64,000 nucleotides of DNA from NCBI GenBank assembly GCA_004431415.1, contig QPMI01000662.1, positions 117,747-181,746 on the forward strand, written 5' to 3'. Within the stretch, counting starts at the first letter, position 1, and each line of letters opens with the position of its first letter. The translations under genes and the position numbers were made by a program. Source of the DNA: Cyanophora paradoxa CCMP329 (lineage: Eukaryota; Plantae; Glaucophyta). The notes below the pieces were generated by a model. That model was not told where the DNA came from and made no database searches. It saw only the letters and a program-made list of their open reading frames with translations. Below are positions 16,531-63,461 of the stretch, in pieces.

Positions 16531-18871
16531 ATGAACGCTGCCGCCAAGAAATCCCTGAAACGCCTTGTTGATTGGCTTCGTGAAGACGATGTCCTGTCTG
16601 AGAATATCGTAATACCCGTTGATCCCGATACCAAAAAACCCCTTTTCGCCCATAAAGACGGATCGTGGACTTGGGATAAATTCGATGAAGCCCTGAAATC
16701 CGGTAAGTATGTTGCTTGGGGCATTCTCGCTCGCAATATCGTGGTTATCGACTTCGACCAAGAGGAGGATTTCACCAAATTCGAGGAGCAATTCCCGATG
16801 ATTTCGGTGGTGTCAATCCTCTTGCTAAAACCAAAAAAGGATATCATGTTTACTTCTCTCGTCCTTCTGACTTCGATGCTGTGAAGATCTGGGATAAAGC
16901 GGGTGCTTTCAAAGGTTATCCTAAGATCGACTGTAAGACAATTGCGTCCACTGGAACTGCTGGGTTGATCAACGTTTCCCCAAGCCCGGTAAAACTTGGA
17001 TCAGAGAACCATGGGCGGAAGGCTGTGAGTTGATCGAACCGAGTGCTGAACTCCAAAAGTGGATGATTGACAACTACCTTTTTCCGAAAGGCGGACACTC
17101 TTCTATTGATAGGAGCATTGAAGAGGATTTGCAGAAACACATTCTCCGGAAACTTGAAGAATTTGGTTTCATCTTACCCACAATCATTAATGAGACCGAG
17201 AAGGGTTACAGTTTCACTGCTGAGAACAAAGGTCTGATTTGTCCCTGCTGCAAGGGAAGCCATGACTCCAACAATTGGTATATACTTCAAGGGAACGAGA
17301 AAGACAAGTATATTGTTTCAAGTTATAGCACCAATTGCAAGAAGCGAGTTATGACGGTTCGCGTTCAAGCTGATACCGATGTTCAGATTGAAAAGCTAAT
17401 TGATCGGTCGATTGGATCTGATGGCGGACATTATGATGTTGCCCAGGTTGCTTTTCTTGTTCTGCGAGACAGCTACAAGTATTCAAACAAGACGTGGTTC
17501 AAGTTCAACGAGGCTTACGGAATCTGGGAGATGGATGAGACCGGGAAACGAATCTATCTGTGTTTGAGTTGCAGGGTTTGCCCGGCTTATCTTCAACGTG
17601 CTGTGCAATTCGCTCAGAGAGCGCTTCGTGATGAAGAGAATCGTGCATCTTTGGAGGAGAGATCACAGGTTCTTCTTGGTATCGCAAAGAAACTCAAACA
17701 GACTAATTACCGAACTTCTCTTCTGTCTGATCTCACAGTTCTGATGAACGATAAGACATTCTTCGAGAGACTTGATACTGTTACCAATGTGATTGGATTC
17801 ACAAATGGCGTATTTGATCTGAATTCTATGACTTTCCGAAGGGGACTCCCAGAAGACATGATCAGTAAGACTGTTGGTTATGATTATTGCCCCGAGGTGG
17901 ATTCTGTGAAAGTCACCAAGATCCTTTCCATCTACTCTGACATCATCGAAGAGGAAATTGAGCGCAATTTCGTGATGGGTTCGATCGCTTTCTCTCTGAG
18001 TGGTCGCACAGATATTCAAAAGTTCAATTTCTGGACTGGAATTGGAGCCAATGGTAAATCTCTCGTTCAGGAGATGGTCAAGCAAACATTCGGACAGTAT
18101 TTCGGAACAATCAATATGTCATATTGGACGAAACCGAAAAAGAATGCATCAGACGCTACACCTGAACTTGCGGATATTCTGGGTCGTCGCATTATCTTTT
18201 CAAATGAAGCGGAAGATGGCGACAAGCTTCAAATTAGCAAGATCAAAGAGATTACAGGTGGTAACGAGATGAAGGTTCGCGCCCTGTTCAAAGATCCTGT
18301 TACCTACATTCCTATGGGTCAAATCTTCTTATCGACGAATGAGAACCTGGGGATGAGTAAACCCGATGCTGCGATTTACCGGCGACTCTCTTACTATCGT
18401 TTCTCTTGTGTCTTCAAGCCCAACCCTCAACCTGGTGAGAAGAAAGCGGATACTTCGCTTATGTCCATCATGAATGACGACGAATACAAGATGGCTCAAA
18501 TGTCGATCTTCTTGGACATGTGGAAGAAACAGGATCTTGCACAGCTGCTGATGAATCCGCCACAGTCTATCATCGATCAGGGACTTGAATACTTTAATGA
18601 TAACGATAAAATCGGGGAATGGCTCCGCAGCACTTATGAGAAGACCGGAAGCCGAAATGATTTCATTTCGAGTGAATCTATCATTGCTGGCTATCGTTCT
18701 GTTGATGATAAAACCGATGCCACGAGTATTGGAAAGCGAGTCCGCGAAGTCTTTAATGTGAAGTCTGAAACTGTTCGAGAAAGAGGTCAGGTGAAGCGTG
18801 GTTACTTCGGACTGAAAAAGAAGATTATGATTGAGGACGACGATGACGACGACGTAGAGGCTCCCAACTAA
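16531..18871 (+). CDS. Prim-Pol (AEP primase-polymerase) + Zn-binding + D5-type SF3 helicase fusion (~780 aa; two 1-bp frameshifts)
   Basis: VIPV...KKPL, IVVIDFD, TKKGYHVYF (Prim-Pol); CPCC..H..C; IGFTNGVFDL (D5_N); Walker A GIGANGKS; IKEITGG. Frames join by adding one C at about 16795 and one at about 16987. Confidence 0.85.
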
Positions 18872-18938
18872 TTACAACAAAACATACTATTCTTACTGAT
18901 AATTCATACTTTTTTTATAACCTTACTGAAAACAGTAA

Positions 18939-19030
18939 GTGTAACAGGTGTAACAGGTAAATCCCAAACTTCGCTCCTAGGGAGGTGAAAATCCGAAAAC
19001 TTTGGGATTTACCTGTTACACCCGTTACAC
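18939..19030. promoter_or_regulatory. Internal copy of the TIR iteron palindrome directly downstream of the primase-helicase gene
   Basis: GTGTAACAGGTGTAACAGGTAAATCCCAAA (18939-18968) pairs with TTTGGGATTTACCTGTTACACCCGTTACAC (19001-19030), one mismatch. The loop closely resembles that of the TIR copy at 36762-36854. Confidence 0.65.
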
Positions 19031-54294: not shown

Positions 54295-56224
54295 ATGGAC
54301 CGCAGCCAGGTCCCGCTGGCGGGCCCGGTGATGCCGGGAATGGGACCGCCGCGCGATTTGAGGAAAGCTGCGCTGACCTCGGCCGCGGCCGCCGCTCCGA
54401 TGGGTCCGCCGCCGGCTCCAGCTGCCTCGCTCGTGTGCGCAGCCGCCGTGCGCAATACTTGCCGATCCTGGCCGTTGACGCCCGCGCGTCAGGCCCCCGC
54501 AGGCTCCGGTCCGCGGCTTGAAGAAGGAATTCACACCCGTCGAGTGGAGCGCATACTTCGATCGCAAAGAGACGATCCGTGTCGGCGAAAGCATATCCTC
54601 TCTCCGGCTGCTTCCTCCCGTGCTCTAGATTTGCGCGCGCCGCCCTTGACGCGCGCCCTGCACTCGTTCAACGCGTACTTCGCGGGGACGGCCGGCCCCG
54701 TCTTCGTCCTCCTGCACGGCGCCGGCCACTCCGGCCTAAGCTGGGCCGTCTGCGCGGTCCGCCGGCGCCACGCGCGACTCGGCAGGGCGGCAGCTAACGC
54801 GGAGCGGGAACTGTCGCCGGCGCGCGCATGCGCAGTCGCACCTGAAGCAGCGGTGCCGGGTGATGGCGTACGACTTCCGGGGCCACGGGGAGACGGAGAC
54901 GGCGGACGCCGGCAACCTCGCCGCCGACGTCCTCGTCCAGGCGCGCCGGCCCCGGGGCCGGCGCCGGGGCCGCTCGCTGAGGGGGGCGGCAGGACACGGT
55001 GGACGTCGTCAAGGCCGTCTACGGCGAGGAGCAGCCGCCCATCGTCCTCGTCGGCCACAGGCGCCCCCGCCGCCCGCCCGCCCGCCCGCCCTGCGCGGCC
55101 GGGGGCGACGGGGCGGGGCAGCATGGGCGGGGCGATTGCGGCGCGGGCGGCGGTGGCGGTGGAGGGCATCCCCTCCCTCGCCGGCCTCGCCGTCATCGAC
55201 GTCGTCGAGGGCACCGCCCTCCAGGCCCGCCCCGCCCCGCCCCGGCCCCTTCCCTGAGCGGGGGGCTGAGGGGGCGGGGGCGGCAGAGCCTGCAGCACAT
55301 GCGGGGCGTCCTGCAGCAGCGCCCCCCGGGCTTCGAGTCCCTGCCCCGCGCCATCGAGTGGAGGCGCCGCCCCCGCCCCCGACCCCCCGCCCCGCCCCCG
55401 CCACCGCCCCCTCACGGCCCCGCGCAGCGTCAAGAGCGGGACGCTGAGGAGCGTGGCGAGCGCCCGCGTCTCCTTCCCGGGGCAGGCGCGTGCCCTCCAG
55501 GTCCCCAGCATCCCGCCGCCCGAGTTTCGAGCCCCCGTGCGCGCAGTTGAAGGCGCTGGGGAACGGCAAGTACGGCTGGCGCATCGACCTCTTCGAGAGC
55601 GAGCGCTACTGGCACGGTGCCGTACCCCTCTTCGACGTCCCGTGCCTCTCTCGCCTGAGGGTTGCGCATGCGCAGGCTGGTTCGCGGGGCTGTCGGAGCT
55701 CTTCCTCTCGGCGCGCGTCCCGAAGATGCTGCTCGTCGCCGGCACCGACCGCCTCGACCGGCCCCTCACCATCGCCCAGATGCAGGCTCGAGTCCCCGCC
55801 GGCCCCTTTCCCTCCTGCTTCCTCTCTGATTCGAGATTTCGCAGGGCAAGTTCCAGCTCGCGCTGATATACGGCACCGGCCACTCCGTACACGAGGCGCG
55901 TACCCCTCGTCGTCCCCCTCCCCCTGTTTCGACCCCGTACCCCAGGACGAGCCGGAGAAGACGGCGGGCCAGCTGCTGGAGTTTGTCGAAAGGAACCGCG
56001 TGGGCATGGGCCCCCTCGTACCCGTCCCCGGGCACCCCCCCATCTCCCCCGCCGTACCCCGCCCCCCGGTCCCCCTCGCTGGGCCTCTCGCTGGGCCCGC
56101 GGCGGCGCCGCGGCCTCCGAGGCCCGCCCCAGGCGCATCGGCAGATTGCCCCGGGGCAGTACCCCTCCCGCACTTCGGAGGGGAGACGGTCGAGGAGGGG
56201 GACGAGGAGGTTGACGCCCCGTAG
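54295..56224 (+). CDS. PPME1: Protein phosphatase methylesterase 1 (PME-1), multi-exon
   Basis: FTPVEWSAYF, LLHGAGHSGLSWA, DFRGHGET, GH|SMGGAIA, IDVVEGTA, WFAGLSELFL, LVAGTDRLDRPLTIAQMQ|GKFQ, GHSVHE|DEP. Confidence 0.92.
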
Positions 56225-57341
56225 GTCTTAGGTGTAGGTGCAGGCCTGCACATTCTTCTATTTTTGCAGTTTTGCTTGAAAAGGCACCATTGCTGTGGCT
56301 AGTGTGGCTAGGAGCTATCCGAGTGCTGAAGTGCTAAATTCAAGTGCCAAAAAGCTCCGCCGCCGCCGCCGCCAGCAGCGCCTCCCGCGCCCACAGCCGC
56401 GCCACCCGCTGCAGCGCCTGCGCGTCTGCGCGCAGCGCTCAGCGCTAGCCGGCGGGGGCGGGGCGGGGCGGGGCGGGGCGGGCCGAGGGGACGCGGGCGT
56501 AGGTGCAGGAGGCGTGGTCGGGGAGGGCCGCCAGGAGCGCCTCGTCCGCCCCGTCCTCCGCCCGCCCGCCGCCGCCCACACGAACTCCAGCGCCGCCCCC
56601 GCCGCCCCGCCCGTTCGCACGCGCGCCCGTACGACGCCGACGCGAACCCCCGCAGCGAGAGCACCGTCACGCGCGGCGGCGCAGCCGGCGGCGCCCCGGG
56701 CGCCGGCGCCGGGCGCGCCGCGACCGCCGCGTCCACGAGCTCGGCCAGCTGGTCCCCGGGCTCCGCGGCGCCTGTTGCGCGCGCGTCGGGCGAGGGACGT
56801 GGAGGGGCGAGGGAGCGCGCACGTCTGCCGGCGCCGGCAGAACCATCGAGCACACGCGCGAGCCCCAGGGGCGGCGGCGGCGCGCCCTGCGAGGACAGCG
56901 CGCACGCGAGCTCCGCGAATGTCCTCAGCGCGTCCCGCGCGTGCGCGGCGAAGGCGGCCGTGTCGCTTCCGGGCCTTGCGCAGGCCCGCAGGCACCGCTG
57001 AAGTGAAACGCGGCCCGCTTGGGGATGGGGCCGCGATCGGAGGGGGGTACCGAACCTGCGGAGTCTAGCGTTGATCTGGTCGCTGATCACCGCGGCCGGC
57101 CATCACGGCGAGAACGCGAGCCCCAGCTCCGAAGGCGCATGCGAAGCGCCAAATGAGCTAGGCTGGACTTTCGGCGAACGCCGGTTGCGTCGAGTCAGAG
57201 CGTTTGTTCGTTTCGGGCATCACATCGCGCGGACCTCGGACGGAGCACGTCGATGCGCGTGCCGGTTGCAGACGGGAGCGGACTCGCGTAGAACGGCATT
57301 GCGGGCTCGGCGCCCGCAGCGACACATCGCGGCGCGGAGAA

Positions 57342-60300
57342 ATGGGGCGGTCCGACGGCGCGGGCCGGGTCGAGGAAGAGATCGAAGAAGCGCAGATCCG
57401 CGAGCTGCAGCGCGGGTACGTCTCGCGGCGTGCCGGCGGGGCGCCGCGGGCGCGGGAACCGCCACATGTGAAACGGCGGTCGGCAGGCTGGTGCAGGAGA
57501 CGGGGTGCGTGGTGGTGGTCTCGCCGGGGCTGCTGGAGGTGCAGCAGGTGTCGGAGAACCTGGAGGTCTTCTTCGGGGTGCGCCCCGAGAAGGCCCTCGG
57601 GCGCTCGCTCGAGGCGCTCCTCGGCCACGACTCGTTCGACCAGCTGCAGGCGCGCTGGCCCCGCCCCGCCCCGCGCTAGCTGGCGCCGAGCGCGGGGCGC
57701 GCAGCGGGCCCTGGCGAAGGACGCGAAGGACCTCGCGGAGCTGCTGCCGATCGCCGTGCAGCGCGCCGACGGCCGCGGCGGCCTCGCGTGCATCCCGAGC
57801 CAGCCCGAGGAGGAGTACTGGGTGCTCGAGTTCGAGCCGCTGGTGCTGGGCGACGGGGCGGCGGCGGCGCTGCTGCCGCCGGGGATGCGGGCGGTTCCGT
57901 GCGTGAACCCGAGCTCGGTGCGGCGCGCCGTCGAGGAGCTGCACGAGCTCGAGGAGTCGGAAACCGGCCTCTTCGCCGCCGTCTGCGAGACCTTCTCCCG
58001 CCTCCTGTCCGCCCCCCGCCCCGCCCCGCCCCGCCCCGCGCCGCCGCCGGCGAGGCCGGGGCGGGCAGGGAGTTCGACCGGGTGATGTGCTACAAGTTCG
58101 CGCGGGACTGGCACGGCGAGGTCGTCGGCGAGGCCCTCCGCCCCGGCGTCCACCCGCCCTTCCTCGGCCTCAACTTCCCCGCCACGTCCGCCCCCGCCCG
58201 CACCCCGGCCCCGCCCCGCAGCCAGTTAGCCAGCTAGCTAGGACGCCGCGCCCGCCCGCCCGCCCGCCCGCCCGGCCGGCCGAGGCCGACGACGCGCTGG
58301 CCGGCGCAGGGACGTGCCGCCCTTCTTCCGGCAGAGCTTCTTCAAGCACCGAGTGCGGCACGTCTCCAGCACCAACGGCCGTGCGCCCCGCCCCCGCCCC
58401 GCCCCCGCGCCCCGCCCCGACCCCCCGGCGGGGGCGCGCAGGCGAGTACGCGGTGATCCCGTCGACGAACCCGGACACGGGGGGCCCGGTGGACCTGATG
58501 CCGTGCGGCCTGCGGGCGCCCACCAAGTGCAGCCGCGACTACTACAACAACATGGGCTCCCACGCCCAGCTCACGTGCGCCCCGAGCCCAGCCGCCTCTC
58601 AGCTAGCCTGCAAATGTGAGCCGGGGGCGCCGGCCGGCCCCCGCGCAGGTTCGCGGTGACGGTGCGGCGGAAGCTGTGGGGCACGATCAGCTGCCACCAC
58701 GGGGCCCCCGCCTTCGTGACCTACGCCACGCGCGCCGCCCTCCTCCCCATCGTGGCGGTGCCCCGGCGCCCCCCGCCCCGCCCCGCCCGCCCTCGCCCGG
58801 CCCGACGCGGGGGGCGGGGGCCAGGCGCTGGGGAAGACGGTGGAGCGGATGCAGCTGGAGCGGCAGCGCGCCACCGAGGCCCGCATCCGCGCCCTCACCA
58901 CCGCCGTCCGCCCCGCCCCGCGCCCCCGCCCCCGTCTCCCCTCTGATGCGCGGGGGCAGATGTACGGGCGGGCGGCGAACCAGCCGGAGAGCTTCCTCCA
59001 GAGCCTCGTGGGCGAGGACGTCGCGCCCCTCGCCTCCTCCGCCCCCGCCTCCGCCTCCGCCGCCACCCCGCGCCGCCTCCGCAGCCTCCCCGCCATCGGC
59101 CTCGCCCTCGACTCCCTCGCCTCCTCACAGGGCAGCGACTCCGGCGCCGGCGCCGACTCCTCCTCCGCCGGCGGCGACAGGGAGCGCGAGCGCGAGCGCG
59201 AGCGGGAGGCGCCGGGCGGCAGCGCGGGCTCGCCCCTGCTCCGCTCGCTCTCGGTGTCGGGGAGCCTCGCGCCGCCCGCCGCGACGCCGCTCCGCAAGCG
59301 GTCGATCGCGCGGTCGGAGTCGGGGTCGGGCGGGGGCCGGACGCCGCACCTGGAGGGGGAGATGCCGCGGCCGGCGCGGCGGCGGCCGCTGGGGATCGAG
59401 GTGGACGCGGACCCCTCGATGCTCCAGATCGTCCAGTGCTGCGGCGTCTGCGTCGTCTACGACGGCGAGAAGGCCCGCCCCAGGCGGGGCGGGGGCCATC
59501 GAGGCGGCGGGGCTGAGCTCCTCCCTCCCCCGCAGGTGTGCGGGGGCGTGGTGCCGCCGCTGGCGGACATCGAGGCGATCTGCGCGATCCTGGACAACCC
59601 CGTCTGCCTGGCGCTGATCGCGGCGGACCTGAGCCGGGAGGGCGAGTGGGAGGGGGAGGGCGACGACGCCGAGTTCGTCTGCTGGGCCGCCGAGTCCGCC
59701 CAGCGCTCCCTCGCTGAGGCCCGCCCCGCCTTCCCCCCCCCCCTCTCCCGCCCTCGTCTCTCTCCCTCTGACCTCGCTCGCCCCGCAGGTCTCGCCCGGG
59801 GTGAAGCTCGAGTGGTCGGGCGGCCTGCTCGTGCTCCTGCTCGACGAGGGGTACGCCATGTGGTTCCGCGAGGCCCGCACCGCCCTCGTCCGCTGGGCCG
59901 GCTGCGGCGCCTACTCTGTCAACGACGAGGGCGGCTACGGGCCCCGCGCCTCCTTCGACCAGTGCGATCCCCCCCCCCCTCCCCCTCCCCCCCCGTACGC
60001 GCTCACGTACCCCCCGCAGGTGGAAGGAGGAGGTCGGGGACCAGTGCGAGCCGTGGAGCGAGGAGGCGCGCCCGCCCGTGCCCCCCGCCCCCCCCCCCGC
60101 TCGCGGCCAACGCGCGCGGGCAGGACGAGGTGGCGGCGAAGGCGTTCCGGGCGGCCATCGCCGACGCCCTCCGCCTCATCGGTGCCCGGGGCCCCTCCCG
60201 CCCGCCCCGCCCCGCCCGCCGGCCTCGAGCGGGGGGCAGGGACGCTGCGGCGGCTGCGGGAGATCGAGCGGCGGAGCGTGGCGGCGCGGCCCGACGCCGA

Positions 60301-63300
60301 CTTCAGCACCCCCGCCGACCGCCTCGTCTCCGCCCTCTCCGTCATGGCCGGCAAGCCCGGTCCGTGCCGCGCCGCCCCCTCCCCGCCCCCGCCCCCCCCC
60401 CCCCCCCCCCCCCCCGCCCCGCCCCCGCCCTCCCGCCCTCGCGGGGCCCGAGCTGGGCGGCAGGGGTCTCGGAGGAGGAGAAGCGAGCGCTGGAGGCCTG
60501 CCTCACGCTCCTCACCTCCCAGCAGAACCTGCGCGCCGCGGCCTCCCCTCCCCCCGCCCCGCCCCGCTGACGGGGCGGCGCGGGGCAGGTACACGCCGGA
60601 CCTGGCGGGGCAGGTGCAGGCCGGCAAGCTCCGTCTCGATCGCGACACCCGCCGCTGGCTCTTCTCCGAGGCCCGCCCCGCGCTCCCCGCCCCGGCCCCG
60701 CCCCGCCCCGCGCTCCCCGCCCCGCCCCCGCGCGGCCTCTGAGGGCGGGGCGGGGCAGATCGCGCCCCAGGGGAGCTCCCGCGCCCTCGACACCGTCTCC
60801 ACGATGCGCGTGCCCCCCGCTCCTCGCCGCGCAGCGCCGCGGGGCGGGGCGGCTGAGGGGGGCGGCGGGGCAGGTCGACGCGATCGATGTCGCGCACGAA
60901 CTCGTTCAGCGGGAGCCACCCGAGCAGCGAGACCGAGGCCGACTCGCCCCGCCCCTGCGGCGCCCCGCGCCCCGACCCCGGCGCCCCGGCGCCCCACGCC
61001 GCCCTGGCCACCCAGCCCCCGCTCCAGTCCGCCCCGCCGCCCCCGGCCGCCCGCCCGCGCCTCCCCCGCCCTCTGACGCGGTACCCCCCGCGCAGGCCGC
61101 GGAGCCCCCTGGTCTCGGGCATCGTGATCGACTCCTCGGAGCTCGAGGAGCGACGGGACGCGCTCTTCACCCTCCTCGACTCGGTGCCGTACCCCGCCCT
61201 GCACCCCGCACCCCCCTCCCCCTCCGTGACCGGCTTTCGGCGCAGGAGTCGCTGGAGCTGGCGTGCGTGCGGGGGACGCTGAGCTCGTGGGACGACTTCG
61301 GTGCGCGCGGGGCGGGGCGGGCCCGCCGGCGGCCGCCGCCCCTCACGGCGCCCGCGCAGACATCTTCACGGTGGCCAAGGGCCCGGCGCTCGGGCGGCCC
61401 CTCTGCGCCACGTGCGCCCCCTTGCCCCGCCGGCCCCGCCGGCCCCTTGGCGCCGGGGCGAGCGGGGCGGGGCGGGGCGCGCAGGGCGTGGATGGTGCTG
61501 GAGCAGCACGGGCTGGTAGCGGCCTTCGCCCTCGACCCGCACCGCCTCCAGGCCTGGCTCTGGTGCATCGAGGACGGCTACCGCAGCAACCGTCCGCCCC
61601 GCCCCCCCCCGCCCCCCCCCCGCCCGACGCGTGCCCCCGCCGGCAGCCTACCACAACAACATCCACGCCAGCGACGTCACGCAGTCCATCGCCTGGCTCC
61701 TCACGCGCGTCCCTTCCCTCCACCCCCTCTCCCCCCCTCTCCCTCCCCATTTCGATACCCCCCGCAGGCGGGGGGCGCTGGCGCCGCACCTGACCGACCT
61801 CGAGAAGCTCGCCCTCGTCATCGCCGCCGTCATCCACGGTACCCCCCCCCCTTCCCTTTCTCCCCTTCTTGTGAATGCTGAAGCCCCTGGCAGACTTCGA
61901 GCACCCCGGATTCAACAACGGTACCCGGCCGCCCCGCGCCCCTCCGCCTCCCCCTCTCTCACGCCTGTACCCCCCGCAGGCTTCCAGGTGGCGACGGCGA
62001 CCGAGCTCGCGCTCCTCTACAACGACCGCGCGCCCCTCGAGAACCACCGTACCCTCCCCCGCCTCGCCACCCTTCGCGCCCCCCTCGCCCGACCTGGTCG
62101 CCGGGCCGGGGCAGACGTGTCGGCGGCGTGGCGGCGGCTGCGGATGCCGCAGCACAACTTCCTCGCCTCGATGAACCCCGCCCAGGCGCGCCCCCCGCCC
62201 GCGCCCACGAGGGCCCCGCTAGCGCTCAATCGGGGGCGGCAGGTGCGGGAGCTGAGGAAGCTCGTCGTCGACATCGTCCTCGCCACGGACATGAGCCAGG
62301 CGCCCCCTCCCCCGCCCCCGCCCCCGCCGCCCCCGCCTCCCCCTCGCGAGTGCGAGCGGGGCCCGCAGCACTTCGAGGGGCTCGGGGTCTTCAAGAAGCG
62401 CGCGGCGGTCGGCTTCGTGGCGGAGGGGGCCCAGGGCCCCTCCTCCCCGCCCCCGCTCTCCGACAGCAAGGCCCGCCACGCCCCCCACGCTCGCACCTCC
62501 CCGCGCCCCCGCCCCCGCCTCACCCCGGCCCCCAGCGCGCCTCCATCTGCCACCGCTCCTCTATCGTCGAGAGCGGGTGCGCCCCGCCGCCCCGCCCCGC
62601 CCGCCCCGCCCCGCCCGCCCCGCCGGCCCCGCCGGCCCCGCCCCGTCGGCGAGCGCGGGCGGGGCGGGCAGGCGGCGCCGACGAACGCGATGGCGGGGCG
62701 GCTGCCGCTGGCGGAGAAGCTCTCCGCCGACGACCGCCGCATCCTCGCCTGCACCGCCCTCAAGGCGCCCCCGGCCCCGCCCCGCCCCGCCCGCCCTGGG
62801 GCCCCCGAGCGGCCCCTGAGCGGGGCGCAGGTGGCGGACATCGGGCACGCGGCGAAGCCGCTGCCGCTGCACGTGGACTGGTCGACGCGCATCTGCAACG
62901 AGTTCTTCGCCCAGGGCGACCGCGAGCGCGACCTGGCCCGCGCCCCCTCCCCCCACGCCCCCCACCGCCCCCCCATCGCCCTCTGAGCGGCGGGGCGCAG
63001 GGCATCCCCGTCTCCCCCTTCATGTGCCGCAAGACCACCGTCATGCCCCGCTCCCAGGCGCCGCCCCCCGCCCCCGCCGCCCCCGCCGGGCCCCCTGACC
63101 GGCCCCGCCCCAGAGCGGCTTCTTCGAGTTCGTCGCCTTCCCCCTCTTCCAGGTGCCCCGCCCCCGCCCCGCCCCTCAGCCCCCCGCCGGCGGCGGCGCG
63201 CTCAGGCGGCGCAGGCGTGGGCCTCCGTCTTCCCCGCCGCCGAGGAGACCCTCCTCCCGCACCTCCAGCGCAACTACCAGGCGCCCCGCCCCGCCCCGCC

Positions 63301-63461
63301 CCGCCCCGTCTTCCTCTGTGCGTGCCGTTTGCTGAGGGTGCGGGGCGGCGCAGCACTGGCAGTCGCTGCCCGTCGACCCCGAGCCGGCCTCCGCCGTCCA
63401 GATCACCAAGGACTCGCCCCGCGCCCCGGCCTCGCCCCGCGCCCCGCGCTCCCCCGCTTAG
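57342..63461 (+). CDS. Phytochrome photosensory module (PAS-GAF-PHY) fused to a class I 3',5'-cyclic nucleotide phosphodiesterase; multi-exon
   Basis: PAS: LQRG|LVQETGCVVV...QVSEN. GAF: FDRVMCYKF..DWHGEVVGE...FLGLNFPAT|DVP...LRAPTKCSRDYYNNMG...LWGTISCHH. PHY: WFRE...VRWAG...PRASFDQ|WKEEV...PW. PDE: YHNNIHASDV, IH|DFEHPGFNN, LLYNDRAPLENH, LATDMSQ|HF, K|VADIGH, EFFAQGDRER, SQ|SGFF. Confidence 0.85.

What the first reader, a model, noticed from the sequence alone, without database searches (positions are those of the whole stretch)
57342..63461. Natural phytochrome-cyclic nucleotide phosphodiesterase fusion: a candidate light-switched cAMP/cGMP eraser
Seen: one co-oriented exon chain gives PAS-GAF-PHY, then a helical linker (TPADRLVSAL...ALEACLTLL...NLYTPDL...DRDTRRWL) resembling the pre-catalytic region of class I PDEs, then a PDE domain with the metal and substrate motifs (YHNxxH, HD, ENH, TDM, AD, EFxxQGD, invariant Q). 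No AT-rich intergenic break, histidine kinase or receiver domain lies between them. Known: eukaryotic phytochromes normally end in kinase-related/REC outputs; bacterial phytochrome-PDEs use EAL or HD-GYP domains on c-di-GMP; phytochrome-class I PDE chimeras have been engineered as optogenetic tools. Inference: a native bilin-based light input to cNMP signalling, possibly controlling flagellar behaviour. I cannot confirm that it is unreported.
Basis: partly seen in the sequence, partly recalled or inferred. Interest (0 to 1): 0.9.

Follow-up and report, generated by a model that had tools for sequence, protein, structure and literature searches.

The report
Natural phytochrome–cAMP/cGMP phosphodiesterase fusion gene
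The alga Cyanophora paradoxa expresses one gene that joins a phytochrome light-sensor module to an intact enzyme that destroys cAMP/cGMP, a pairing I found only as a laboratory-built optogenetic tool, though an altered pigment pocket leaves its light response unproven.

Summary
Confirmed. Window 57342-63461 (+) is a 36-exon Cyanophora paradoxa gene (g22642, 1248 aa): PAS-GAF-PHY, a helical module, a disordered linker, then a class I cyclic-nucleotide phosphodiesterase (PDE).

One spliced RNA contig in each of two studies runs from the PAS exons into the catalytic core. Its record positions match the exon model at all 15 checkpoints (exons 2-18).

All catalytic residues are present; the pocket is PDE1-like (dual cAMP/cGMP inferred). 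The PDE groups with other Cyanophora PDEs; two share the helical module behind membrane segments, so the phytochrome looks swapped in as a new input.

The sensor keeps the Cph1-type Cys, the Asp and the PRxSF tongue, but His260 is Ser and two more pocket residues differ. Bilin binding and light control are therefore inferred (about 50%). About 170 residues separate PHY from the catalytic domain, unlike engineered LAPD.

I found no second natural PHY-PDEase_I protein and no paper describing one. Five key Rockwell/Duanmu papers were unavailable and the homologue searches were insensitive. The scan had not noted this fusion on other DNA.

The parts
57058..57341 (+). 5' untranslated leader, about 284 nt (extent assumes it is unspliced)
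   Evidence: RNA contig X1 has 284 letters beyond the start codon; mostly outside the stretch laid, so the position is inferred
57342..63461 (+). Whole coding gene, 36 exons, 1248 aa (Cyanophora paradoxa tig00021582_g22642.t1, EukProt EP00741 P023438)
   Evidence: RNA contigs
57487..57839 (+). PAS domain (aa 25-124), exons 2-3; no N-terminal biliverdin-binding Cys in the first 24 aa
   Evidence: Pfam PAS_2; Cys list
57969..58721 (+). GAF domain (aa 168-311), exons 3-7, with DRVMxY, FPATDVP, LRA and SCHH motifs
58528..58533 (+). Cys272 at the Cph1 Cys259 position, followed by Ser273 in place of the His found in all 17 aligned phytochromes
   Evidence: alignment to FiDCB 257-260; RNA contigs show no other letters
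58825..60181 (+). GAF-PHY spine helix and PHY domain (about aa 324-675), exons 8-13, with the WAG and PRASF tongue motifs
   Evidence: Pfam PHY; AlphaFold model superposes on whole PAS-GAF-PHY structures, Z 35-39
59011..59379 (+). About 120-aa Ser/Ala/Arg-rich disordered insert inside PHY (aa 368-490), retained in the mRNA; contains one PKA-type RKRSI site
   Evidence: pLDDT under 50; the RNA contig keeps genomic spacing across exon 9
59942..59956 (+). PRxSF tongue motif (aa 634-638)
60060..60286 (+). PHY output helix continuing as one long helix (aa 654-690)
   Evidence: DSSP on both models
60299..60670 (+). Pre-catalytic helical module (aa 695-764), shared with Cyanophora membrane PDEs P0010 and P0012
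   Evidence: phmmer E 9e-12 and 4e-10; alignment; helices 699-712 and 718-733
60759..61138 (+). Disordered Ser/Pro-rich spacer (aa 765-845)
   Evidence: pLDDT under 50; present in the RNA contig
61246..63362 (+). Class I PDE catalytic domain (aa 861-1216): H934, H938, H974, D975, E1004, T1045, D1127, Q1178, F1181; PDE1-like H1130 and H1138; a conserved M-loop Asp is Cys1168

Best explanation
A soluble, probably dimeric, bilin-based photoreceptor-enzyme. Shown: one mRNA encodes a complete PAS-GAF-PHY module in frame with an intact class I PDE. Inferred steps: (1) phycocyanobilin attaches to Cys272 in a remodelled pocket, so the photocycle may not be plain red/far-red. (2) Photoisomerisation refolds the PRxSF tongue and shifts the long PHY output helix (aa 654-690). 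(3) That helix stands where related Cyanophora PDEs have the coiled coil coming from their membrane segments, and it repositions the shared helical module (aa 695-764). (4) The module, tethered by an 80-aa flexible spacer, caps or uncaps the catalytic domain, as the pre-catalytic regulatory helices of animal PDE4 do. Light thereby changes the rate of cAMP and cGMP hydrolysis. The gene arose by domain shuffling within the Cyanophora/glaucophyte lineage, grafting a phytochrome sensor onto a native PDE subfamily. Whether light turns the enzyme on or off cannot be read from sequence.
For: Single spliced contig in two studies. All four Pfam domains score above their cut-offs. Kept, in Cph1 numbering: R172, M174, Y176, D207, P209, R222, R254, C259, Y263, M267, T274, H290, W450, PRxSF and W478. 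The model superposes on complete photosensory modules, Z 39, rmsd 3.0 over 482 residues. The PDE metal, catalytic and substrate residues are all present. The PDE groups with three Cyanophora PDEs at 98/95 support. Two of these share the module after hydrophobic segments and a coiled coil. Phytochrome output helices can drive a class I PDE in engineered LAPD, 4-6 fold (PMC7590022). Glaucophyte phytochromes use PCB and have shifted photocycles (PMC13150293; PMC12420706).
Against: His260 is Ser, Ala212 is Phe and Ser272 is Gln. His260 substitutions can cause loss of chromophorylation in Cph1, although H260Q is near normal. The sensor keeps only 71% of near-invariant positions, against 85-100% for the bacterial comparison set (biased, as no eukaryotic phytochrome was in the set). 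A 120-aa insert sits in PHY and about 170 aa separate PHY from the catalytic domain. No orthologue was found to show conservation. There are no biochemical data.
Confidence: 0.5

Rival explanations
1. Degenerate sensor. The PAS-GAF-PHY part no longer binds or photoswitches a bilin. It serves as a dimerisation or docking module, heterodimerises with a true phytochrome, or senses a tetrapyrrole as a ligand, and the PDE is not directly light-gated.
For: His260 to Ser plus two bulky pocket changes; 71% retention of conserved positions; large insert in PHY. Unchecked scan notes list other Cyanophora phytochromes with Cys to Tyr or a pseudo-cyclase output, which suggests a family with decaying members.
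Against: The attachment Cys, Asp207, both propionate Args, Tyr176, Tyr263, His290 and the complete WAG/PRxSF tongue are all kept, at only about 26% overall identity to relatives. That pattern fits continued selection on the photocycle.
Confidence: 0.3
2. The sensor is photoactive but does not gate catalysis. Light changes localisation, partners or oligomeric state, while catalytic rate is set by phosphorylation (PKA-type sites at Ser465 and Ser1086).
For: An 80-aa disordered spacer breaks the rigid helical path used in LAPD. PKA-type motifs lie in the inserts. The module's likeness to PDE8 and PDE4 regulatory helices is weak.
Against: The output helix runs directly into a module conserved at the same place in sister PDEs with other inputs, which argues that the module relays input to the enzyme.
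Confidence: 0.16
3. Artefact: two neighbouring genes merged by gene prediction or by assembly.
For: Only short-read contigs and no long reads are available. The published models were said to need curation (PMC6704402).
Against: De novo RNA contigs from two studies are spliced straight through the junction exons, with exact length agreement (420 nt between 59961 and 60874). The frame has no stop, there is no AT-rich spacer, and the PDE half has no separate N-terminus.
Confidence: 0.03

Closest known systems
LAPD (engineered Deinococcus bacteriophytochrome sensor + human PDE2A catalytic domain; PMC7590022, PMC8707292)
   Same: PAS-GAF-PHY in front of a class I cNMP PDE, linked through the PHY output helix; likely dual cAMP/cGMP substrate.
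   Different: Natural. It has a GAF Cys (PCB-type) rather than the N-terminal biliverdin Cys. The PDE is of an algal PDE4/PDE1-like clade rather than PDE2A. A helical module plus an 80-aa spacer lie between sensor and enzyme instead of a short coiled coil.
Glaucophyte phytochrome sensors (GPS, e.g. CparGPS1)
   Same: Same organism; PAS-GAF-PHY with a Cys at the canonical GAF site.
   Different: GPS end in PAS, histidine kinase and receiver domains (PMC4525182); this protein has none of these and has Ser after the Cys. Whether its sensor descends from GPS could not be tested, because no GPS sequence was retrievable.
Rhodopsin phosphodiesterases (RhoPDE) of choanoflagellates
   Same: Natural photoreceptor-class I PDE fusion; the only natural light-gated cNMP PDE type listed in the reviews read.
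   Different: RhoPDE is a membrane retinal protein; this is a soluble bilin-type sensor (no clear membrane helix).
Bacteriophytochrome GGDEF-EAL / HD-GYP proteins
   Same: Phytochrome sensor with a nucleotide phosphodiesterase output (P0050, P0054-P0056).
   Different: They carry EAL or HD-GYP domains acting on c-di-GMP, not PDEase_I acting on cAMP/cGMP.
Cyanophora membrane-anchored PDEs g24404, g20571, g12752 (P0010, P0012, P0011)
   Same: Sister catalytic domains (98/95 support); P0010 and P0012 share the pre-catalytic helical module.
   Different: Their input is a set of hydrophobic segments plus a coiled coil, not a phytochrome.

Membership tests
Phytochrome (knotted PAS-GAF-PHY) | PAS, GAF and PHY domains in that order | tested here: met
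   Pfam; model vs PDB, Z 35-39 over residues about 10-680
Phytochrome (knotted PAS-GAF-PHY) | Bilin-attachment Cys (GAF site or N-terminal site) | tested here: met
   Cys272 aligns with FiDCB/Cph1 Cys259; no N-terminal Cys
Phytochrome (knotted PAS-GAF-PHY) | Asp of the DIP motif and PRxSF tongue | tested here: met
   D220 in DVP; P634-R-A-S-F638; W618-A-G
Phytochrome (knotted PAS-GAF-PHY) | His directly after the GAF Cys (His260) | tested here: not met
   Ser273; His in 17 of 17 aligned phytochromes; same letters in RNA
Phytochrome (knotted PAS-GAF-PHY) | Covalent bilin and photoreversible spectrum | not testable with these tools
   needs expression and spectroscopy
Class I cyclic-nucleotide phosphodiesterase | PDEase_I domain and fold | tested here: met
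   E 5e-74; TM-score about 0.9 by target to PDE4 catalytic domains
Class I cyclic-nucleotide phosphodiesterase | Metal ligands and catalytic His (YHNxxH, HD, E, T, D) | tested here: met
   H934, H938, H974, D975, E1004, T1045, D1127
Class I cyclic-nucleotide phosphodiesterase | Invariant Gln and aromatic purine clamp | tested here: met
   Q1178, F1181, I1145
Class I cyclic-nucleotide phosphodiesterase | Measured cAMP/cGMP hydrolysis | not testable with these tools
   needs an enzyme assay
Glaucophyte phytochrome sensor (GPS) | C-terminal PAS + histidine kinase (+ receiver) | tested here: not met
   no such domain in Pfam or NCBIfam; definition from PMC4525182
Glaucophyte phytochrome sensor (GPS) | Sensor module falls in the GPS clade | tested here: inconclusive
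   no GPS sequence was retrieved; GAF scores are nearly equal to bacterial, cyanobacterial and plant phytochromes
Bacteriophytochrome c-di-GMP phosphodiesterase | EAL or HD-GYP output | tested here: not met
PDE4 / PDE8 regulatory region | UCR2- or PDE8-type pre-catalytic helices | tested here: inconclusive
   hhalign E 0.04 (PDE8) and 0.07 (PDE4), probability about 1%; same position before the catalytic domain as in PDE8

The most novel reading that the evidence does not exclude
The first natural phytochrome-gated cAMP/cGMP phosphodiesterase. It is a soluble, photoreversible enzyme whose His-less bilin pocket gives a new photocycle and whose signal passes through a pre-catalytic module rather than a direct coiled coil. 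It would give a primary-plastid alga a one-protein link from light colour to cyclic-nucleotide levels and offer an evolved template for better optogenetic PDEs.
Probability: 0.4. Interest if true: 0.9.

Novelty: new variant of a known kind. Interest (0 to 1): 0.72.

Why it matters
Light-gated cAMP/cGMP-degrading tools are scarce. LAPD and RhoPDE both have high dark activity and a small dynamic range (PMC7590022). A naturally evolved phytochrome-PDE would show how nature solves the coupling and could be a better, bidirectional tool. For algal biology it would add a kinase-independent phytochrome output in the glaucophytes and tie light quality to a cNMP network that appears large in this genome. 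If the sensor works without His260, it would revise what a phytochrome pocket needs. If it does not, the protein is a clear case of a photoreceptor module being reused.

Tried and rejected
Two separate genes: rejected by the spliced RNA contigs.

An extra in-frame intron inside exon 9 that would remove the low-complexity insert: rejected, because the RNA keeps genomic spacing.

A frameshift near exon 30 (62536 onward): resolved by the donor at 62566 in the database model, which is compatible with the contig length.

Searches for a second PHY+PDEase_I protein found none. They were an exhaustive HMMER search with the PHY-tongue exon, three word-indexed searches, metagenome contigs (only bacterial-type phytochromes) and the ESM Atlas. 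These searches did not even return the other known Cyanophora phytochromes, so they are insensitive and do not show absence.

Placing the sensor by similarity failed: it is roughly equidistant from all phytochrome types.

Literature: ten searches found no natural phytochrome-class I PDE. Price 2019 does not mention phytochrome in its main text, and g22642 does not appear in its held, partly cut supplements. Rockwell 2014, 2017 and 2020 and Duanmu 2014 and 2017 were not held.

Later searches used the stored database protein P0001 by id.

Full report
Observation. The stretch 57342-63461 is a GC-rich (0.72-0.82), intron-dense gene on the + strand, with no compositional break inside it; the AT-richer sequence starts after the stop. 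Reading the three frames and splice signals gave 36 exons and 35 introns of 54-124 nt, 20 GT..AG and 15 GC..AG. Exons and natural ORFs searched separately hit PAS_2, PHY and PDEase_I. An exhaustive search with the PHY-tongue exon returned one real hit, a 1248-aa protein identical to it. It is EukProt Cyanophora paradoxa tig00021582_g22642.t1, a singleton cluster. Every exon's translation matches this protein at the expected place. Its domains are PAS_2 (25-124), GAF (168-311), PHY (499-670) and PDEase_I (933-1204), with no kinase or receiver domain.

One transcript. Twelve public runs hold the stretch, the best RNA-like ones with 0.40 of its words, as expected for a spliced message. Runs X1 and X5, from two studies, each have one contig (3765 and 3744 nt) made of exon pieces from 57486 to 61026, plus 989 more letters. 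The record position plus my spliced index equals 3482 at all 15 checkpoints from exon 2 to exon 18, including the 420 nt of linker exons between PHY and the PDE. The 989 remaining letters end at 63004 by the model, beyond the AD and EFFxQGD motifs. Five PDE splice joints have the same contig depth, and a third study shows the same joints. The 2012 run X12 has unspliced pieces across introns, as DNA would. The runs are labelled RNA only by guess and are short-read contigs, but precise intron removal makes them RNA. The fusion is therefore real with about 97% confidence.

The sensor. An AlphaFold model of aa 1-690 (pLDDT 85-96 in GAF) superposes on whole photosensory modules of bacterial, cyanobacterial and plant phytochromes, Z 35-39. 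Such a model leans on its alignment, so it shows compatibility with the fold and nothing about function. Cys272 sits at the Cph1/FiDCB Cys259 position, and there is no N-terminal biliverdin Cys, so a reduced bilin such as PCB is the expected chromophore. PCB is what glaucophyte phytochromes use (PMC13150293). Kept, in Cph1 numbering from my own knowledge: R172, M174, Y176, D207, P209, R222, R254, Y263, M267, T274, H290, W450, PRxSF and W478. Changed: His260 to Ser (His in 17 of 17 aligned relatives), Ala212 to Phe, and Ser272 to Gln. In Cph1, His260 substitutions can cause loss of chromophorylation, while H260Q is nearly normal (PMC12420706). Gln285 could stand in for the lost imidazole, but that is my conjecture and I could not measure it on the model. 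Overall the sensor keeps 40 of 56 near-invariant positions (71%), against 85-100% for the bacterial rows. That comparison is biased because no eukaryotic phytochrome was in the set. A 120-aa disordered insert lies in PHY (aa 368-490) and is in the mRNA. The sensor's ancestry is unresolved: GAF scores against bacterial, cyanobacterial and plant structures are within about 20 bits of each other. A few motifs (LRAP, NMGS, PLGI) look plant-like to me from memory, which is a lead only.

The enzyme. The catalytic domain is closest in the PDB to PDE4, then PDE1. All metal ligands, the catalytic His, the invariant Gln and the purine clamp are present. At the two pocket positions where cAMP-specific PDE4 and PDE8 have Asn and Tyr, it has His and His like PDE1. 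From established PDE structure-function this points to dual cAMP/cGMP specificity (inference). One conserved non-catalytic M-loop Asp is Cys1168. In a tree of 26 catalytic domains it is sister to three other Cyanophora PDEs (98/95), apart from Mesostigma and animal PDEs (unrooted, sparse sampling).

The coupling. The PHY terminal helix continues unbroken to about aa 690, followed by two helices (699-712, 718-733), a short motif ending at aa 764, and about 80 disordered residues before the catalytic domain. The helical module is shared with Cyanophora PDEs P0012 and P0010 (E 9e-12, 4e-10). In those proteins it follows hydrophobic, probably membrane, segments and a coiled coil. It aligns at the same position with the pre-catalytic helices of PDE8, but only weakly. 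The simplest history is a sensor swap: a phytochrome module replaced the membrane input of a native PDE, with its output helix in the place of the coiled coil. The simplest mechanism is that light moves this helix, the module changes its packing in a dimer, and, being on a flexible tether, it caps or releases the active site. This differs from LAPD, where the sensor is joined to PDE2A by a short tuned coiled coil (PMC7590022). The fusion and the intact enzyme are shown; bilin binding, the photocycle, dimerisation and gating are inferred. I give 0.50 to light-gated catalysis, 0.30 to a degenerate sensor, 0.16 to a photoactive sensor that does not gate catalysis, and 0.03 to an artefact.

What is known. 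Glaucophyte phytochromes are described with PAS-histidine kinase(-receiver) outputs (PMC4525182, PMC4422448). A 2026 review figure of algal phytochrome architectures lists kinase, REC, RING, photolyase and cyclase domains but no PDE. Reviews of algal photoreceptors and of light-gated PDEs name only rhodopsin-PDEs as natural and only LAPD as phytochrome-based. The genome paper does not mention phytochromes in its main text, nor this gene in its held supplements. No paper holds both 'phytochrome' and 'PDEase_I'. No second protein with PHY and PDEase_I appeared in any sequence search. However, those searches also missed the other Cyanophora phytochromes, and five papers by Rockwell, Lagarias and Duanmu that survey glaucophyte phytochromes could not be read. 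A prior passing mention is possible; I put it at about 25%. The scan's own notes list cyclase-PDE fusions and several odd phytochromes in this genome, but no phytochrome-PDE. These notes are unchecked and used only as context.

Verdict. This is a real, expressed, natural fusion of a phytochrome photosensory module with an intact class I cNMP phosphodiesterase. It is a new output type for a known receptor family and the natural counterpart of an engineered tool. Its light dependence is plausible but undercut by the His260-to-Ser pocket, and it is testable with one expression experiment. Novelty: new variant of a known kind. Interest 0.72.

Noticed in passing
window 9001-38000: A 29-kb AT-rich block (GC about 0.40 against 0.70-0.80 in the flanks), probably an inserted mobile or virus-like element. 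A scan note mentions a Prim-Pol/SF3 helicase and terminal repeats at 16531-19030.
   Followed up: no
window about 54500-56225 (+): The upstream gene looks like protein phosphatase methylesterase PME-1 (weak PDB hits, E 0.002, from two exons in one ORF).
   Followed up: partly
window about 56300-57110 (-): Possible divergently transcribed gene whose start lies close to or overlaps the inferred 5' leader of the fusion gene; no Pfam hit for the raw ORFs.
   Followed up: partly
window 57416-63353, introns: 15 of 35 introns have GC donors, mostly GCGC or GCCC starts, which is far above the usual eukaryotic share.
   Followed up: partly
runs X13-X20: Eight runs under the same species label (2019, 2024) hold only 0-2% of the gene's words. 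This could be a different strain, low expression or shallow assembly; not resolved.
   Followed up: no
window 62899-63024: A second RNA contig matches the EFFxQGD exon end and the next exon start with 7 other letters between: a paralogous PDE transcript.
   Followed up: no
proteins P0010, P0012, P0017: Cyanophora membrane PDEs, and more weakly a metagenomic protein, share an unannotated ~70-aa pre-catalytic helical module with no Pfam or Atlas match. It may be a general regulatory unit of protist PDEs related to PDE8.
   Followed up: partly
window 58960-59472 and 62462-62565: PKA-type sites (RKRSI, Ser465; KRASI, Ser1086) lie in the PHY insert and in the catalytic-domain loop insert, suggesting cAMP feedback.
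   Followed up: no
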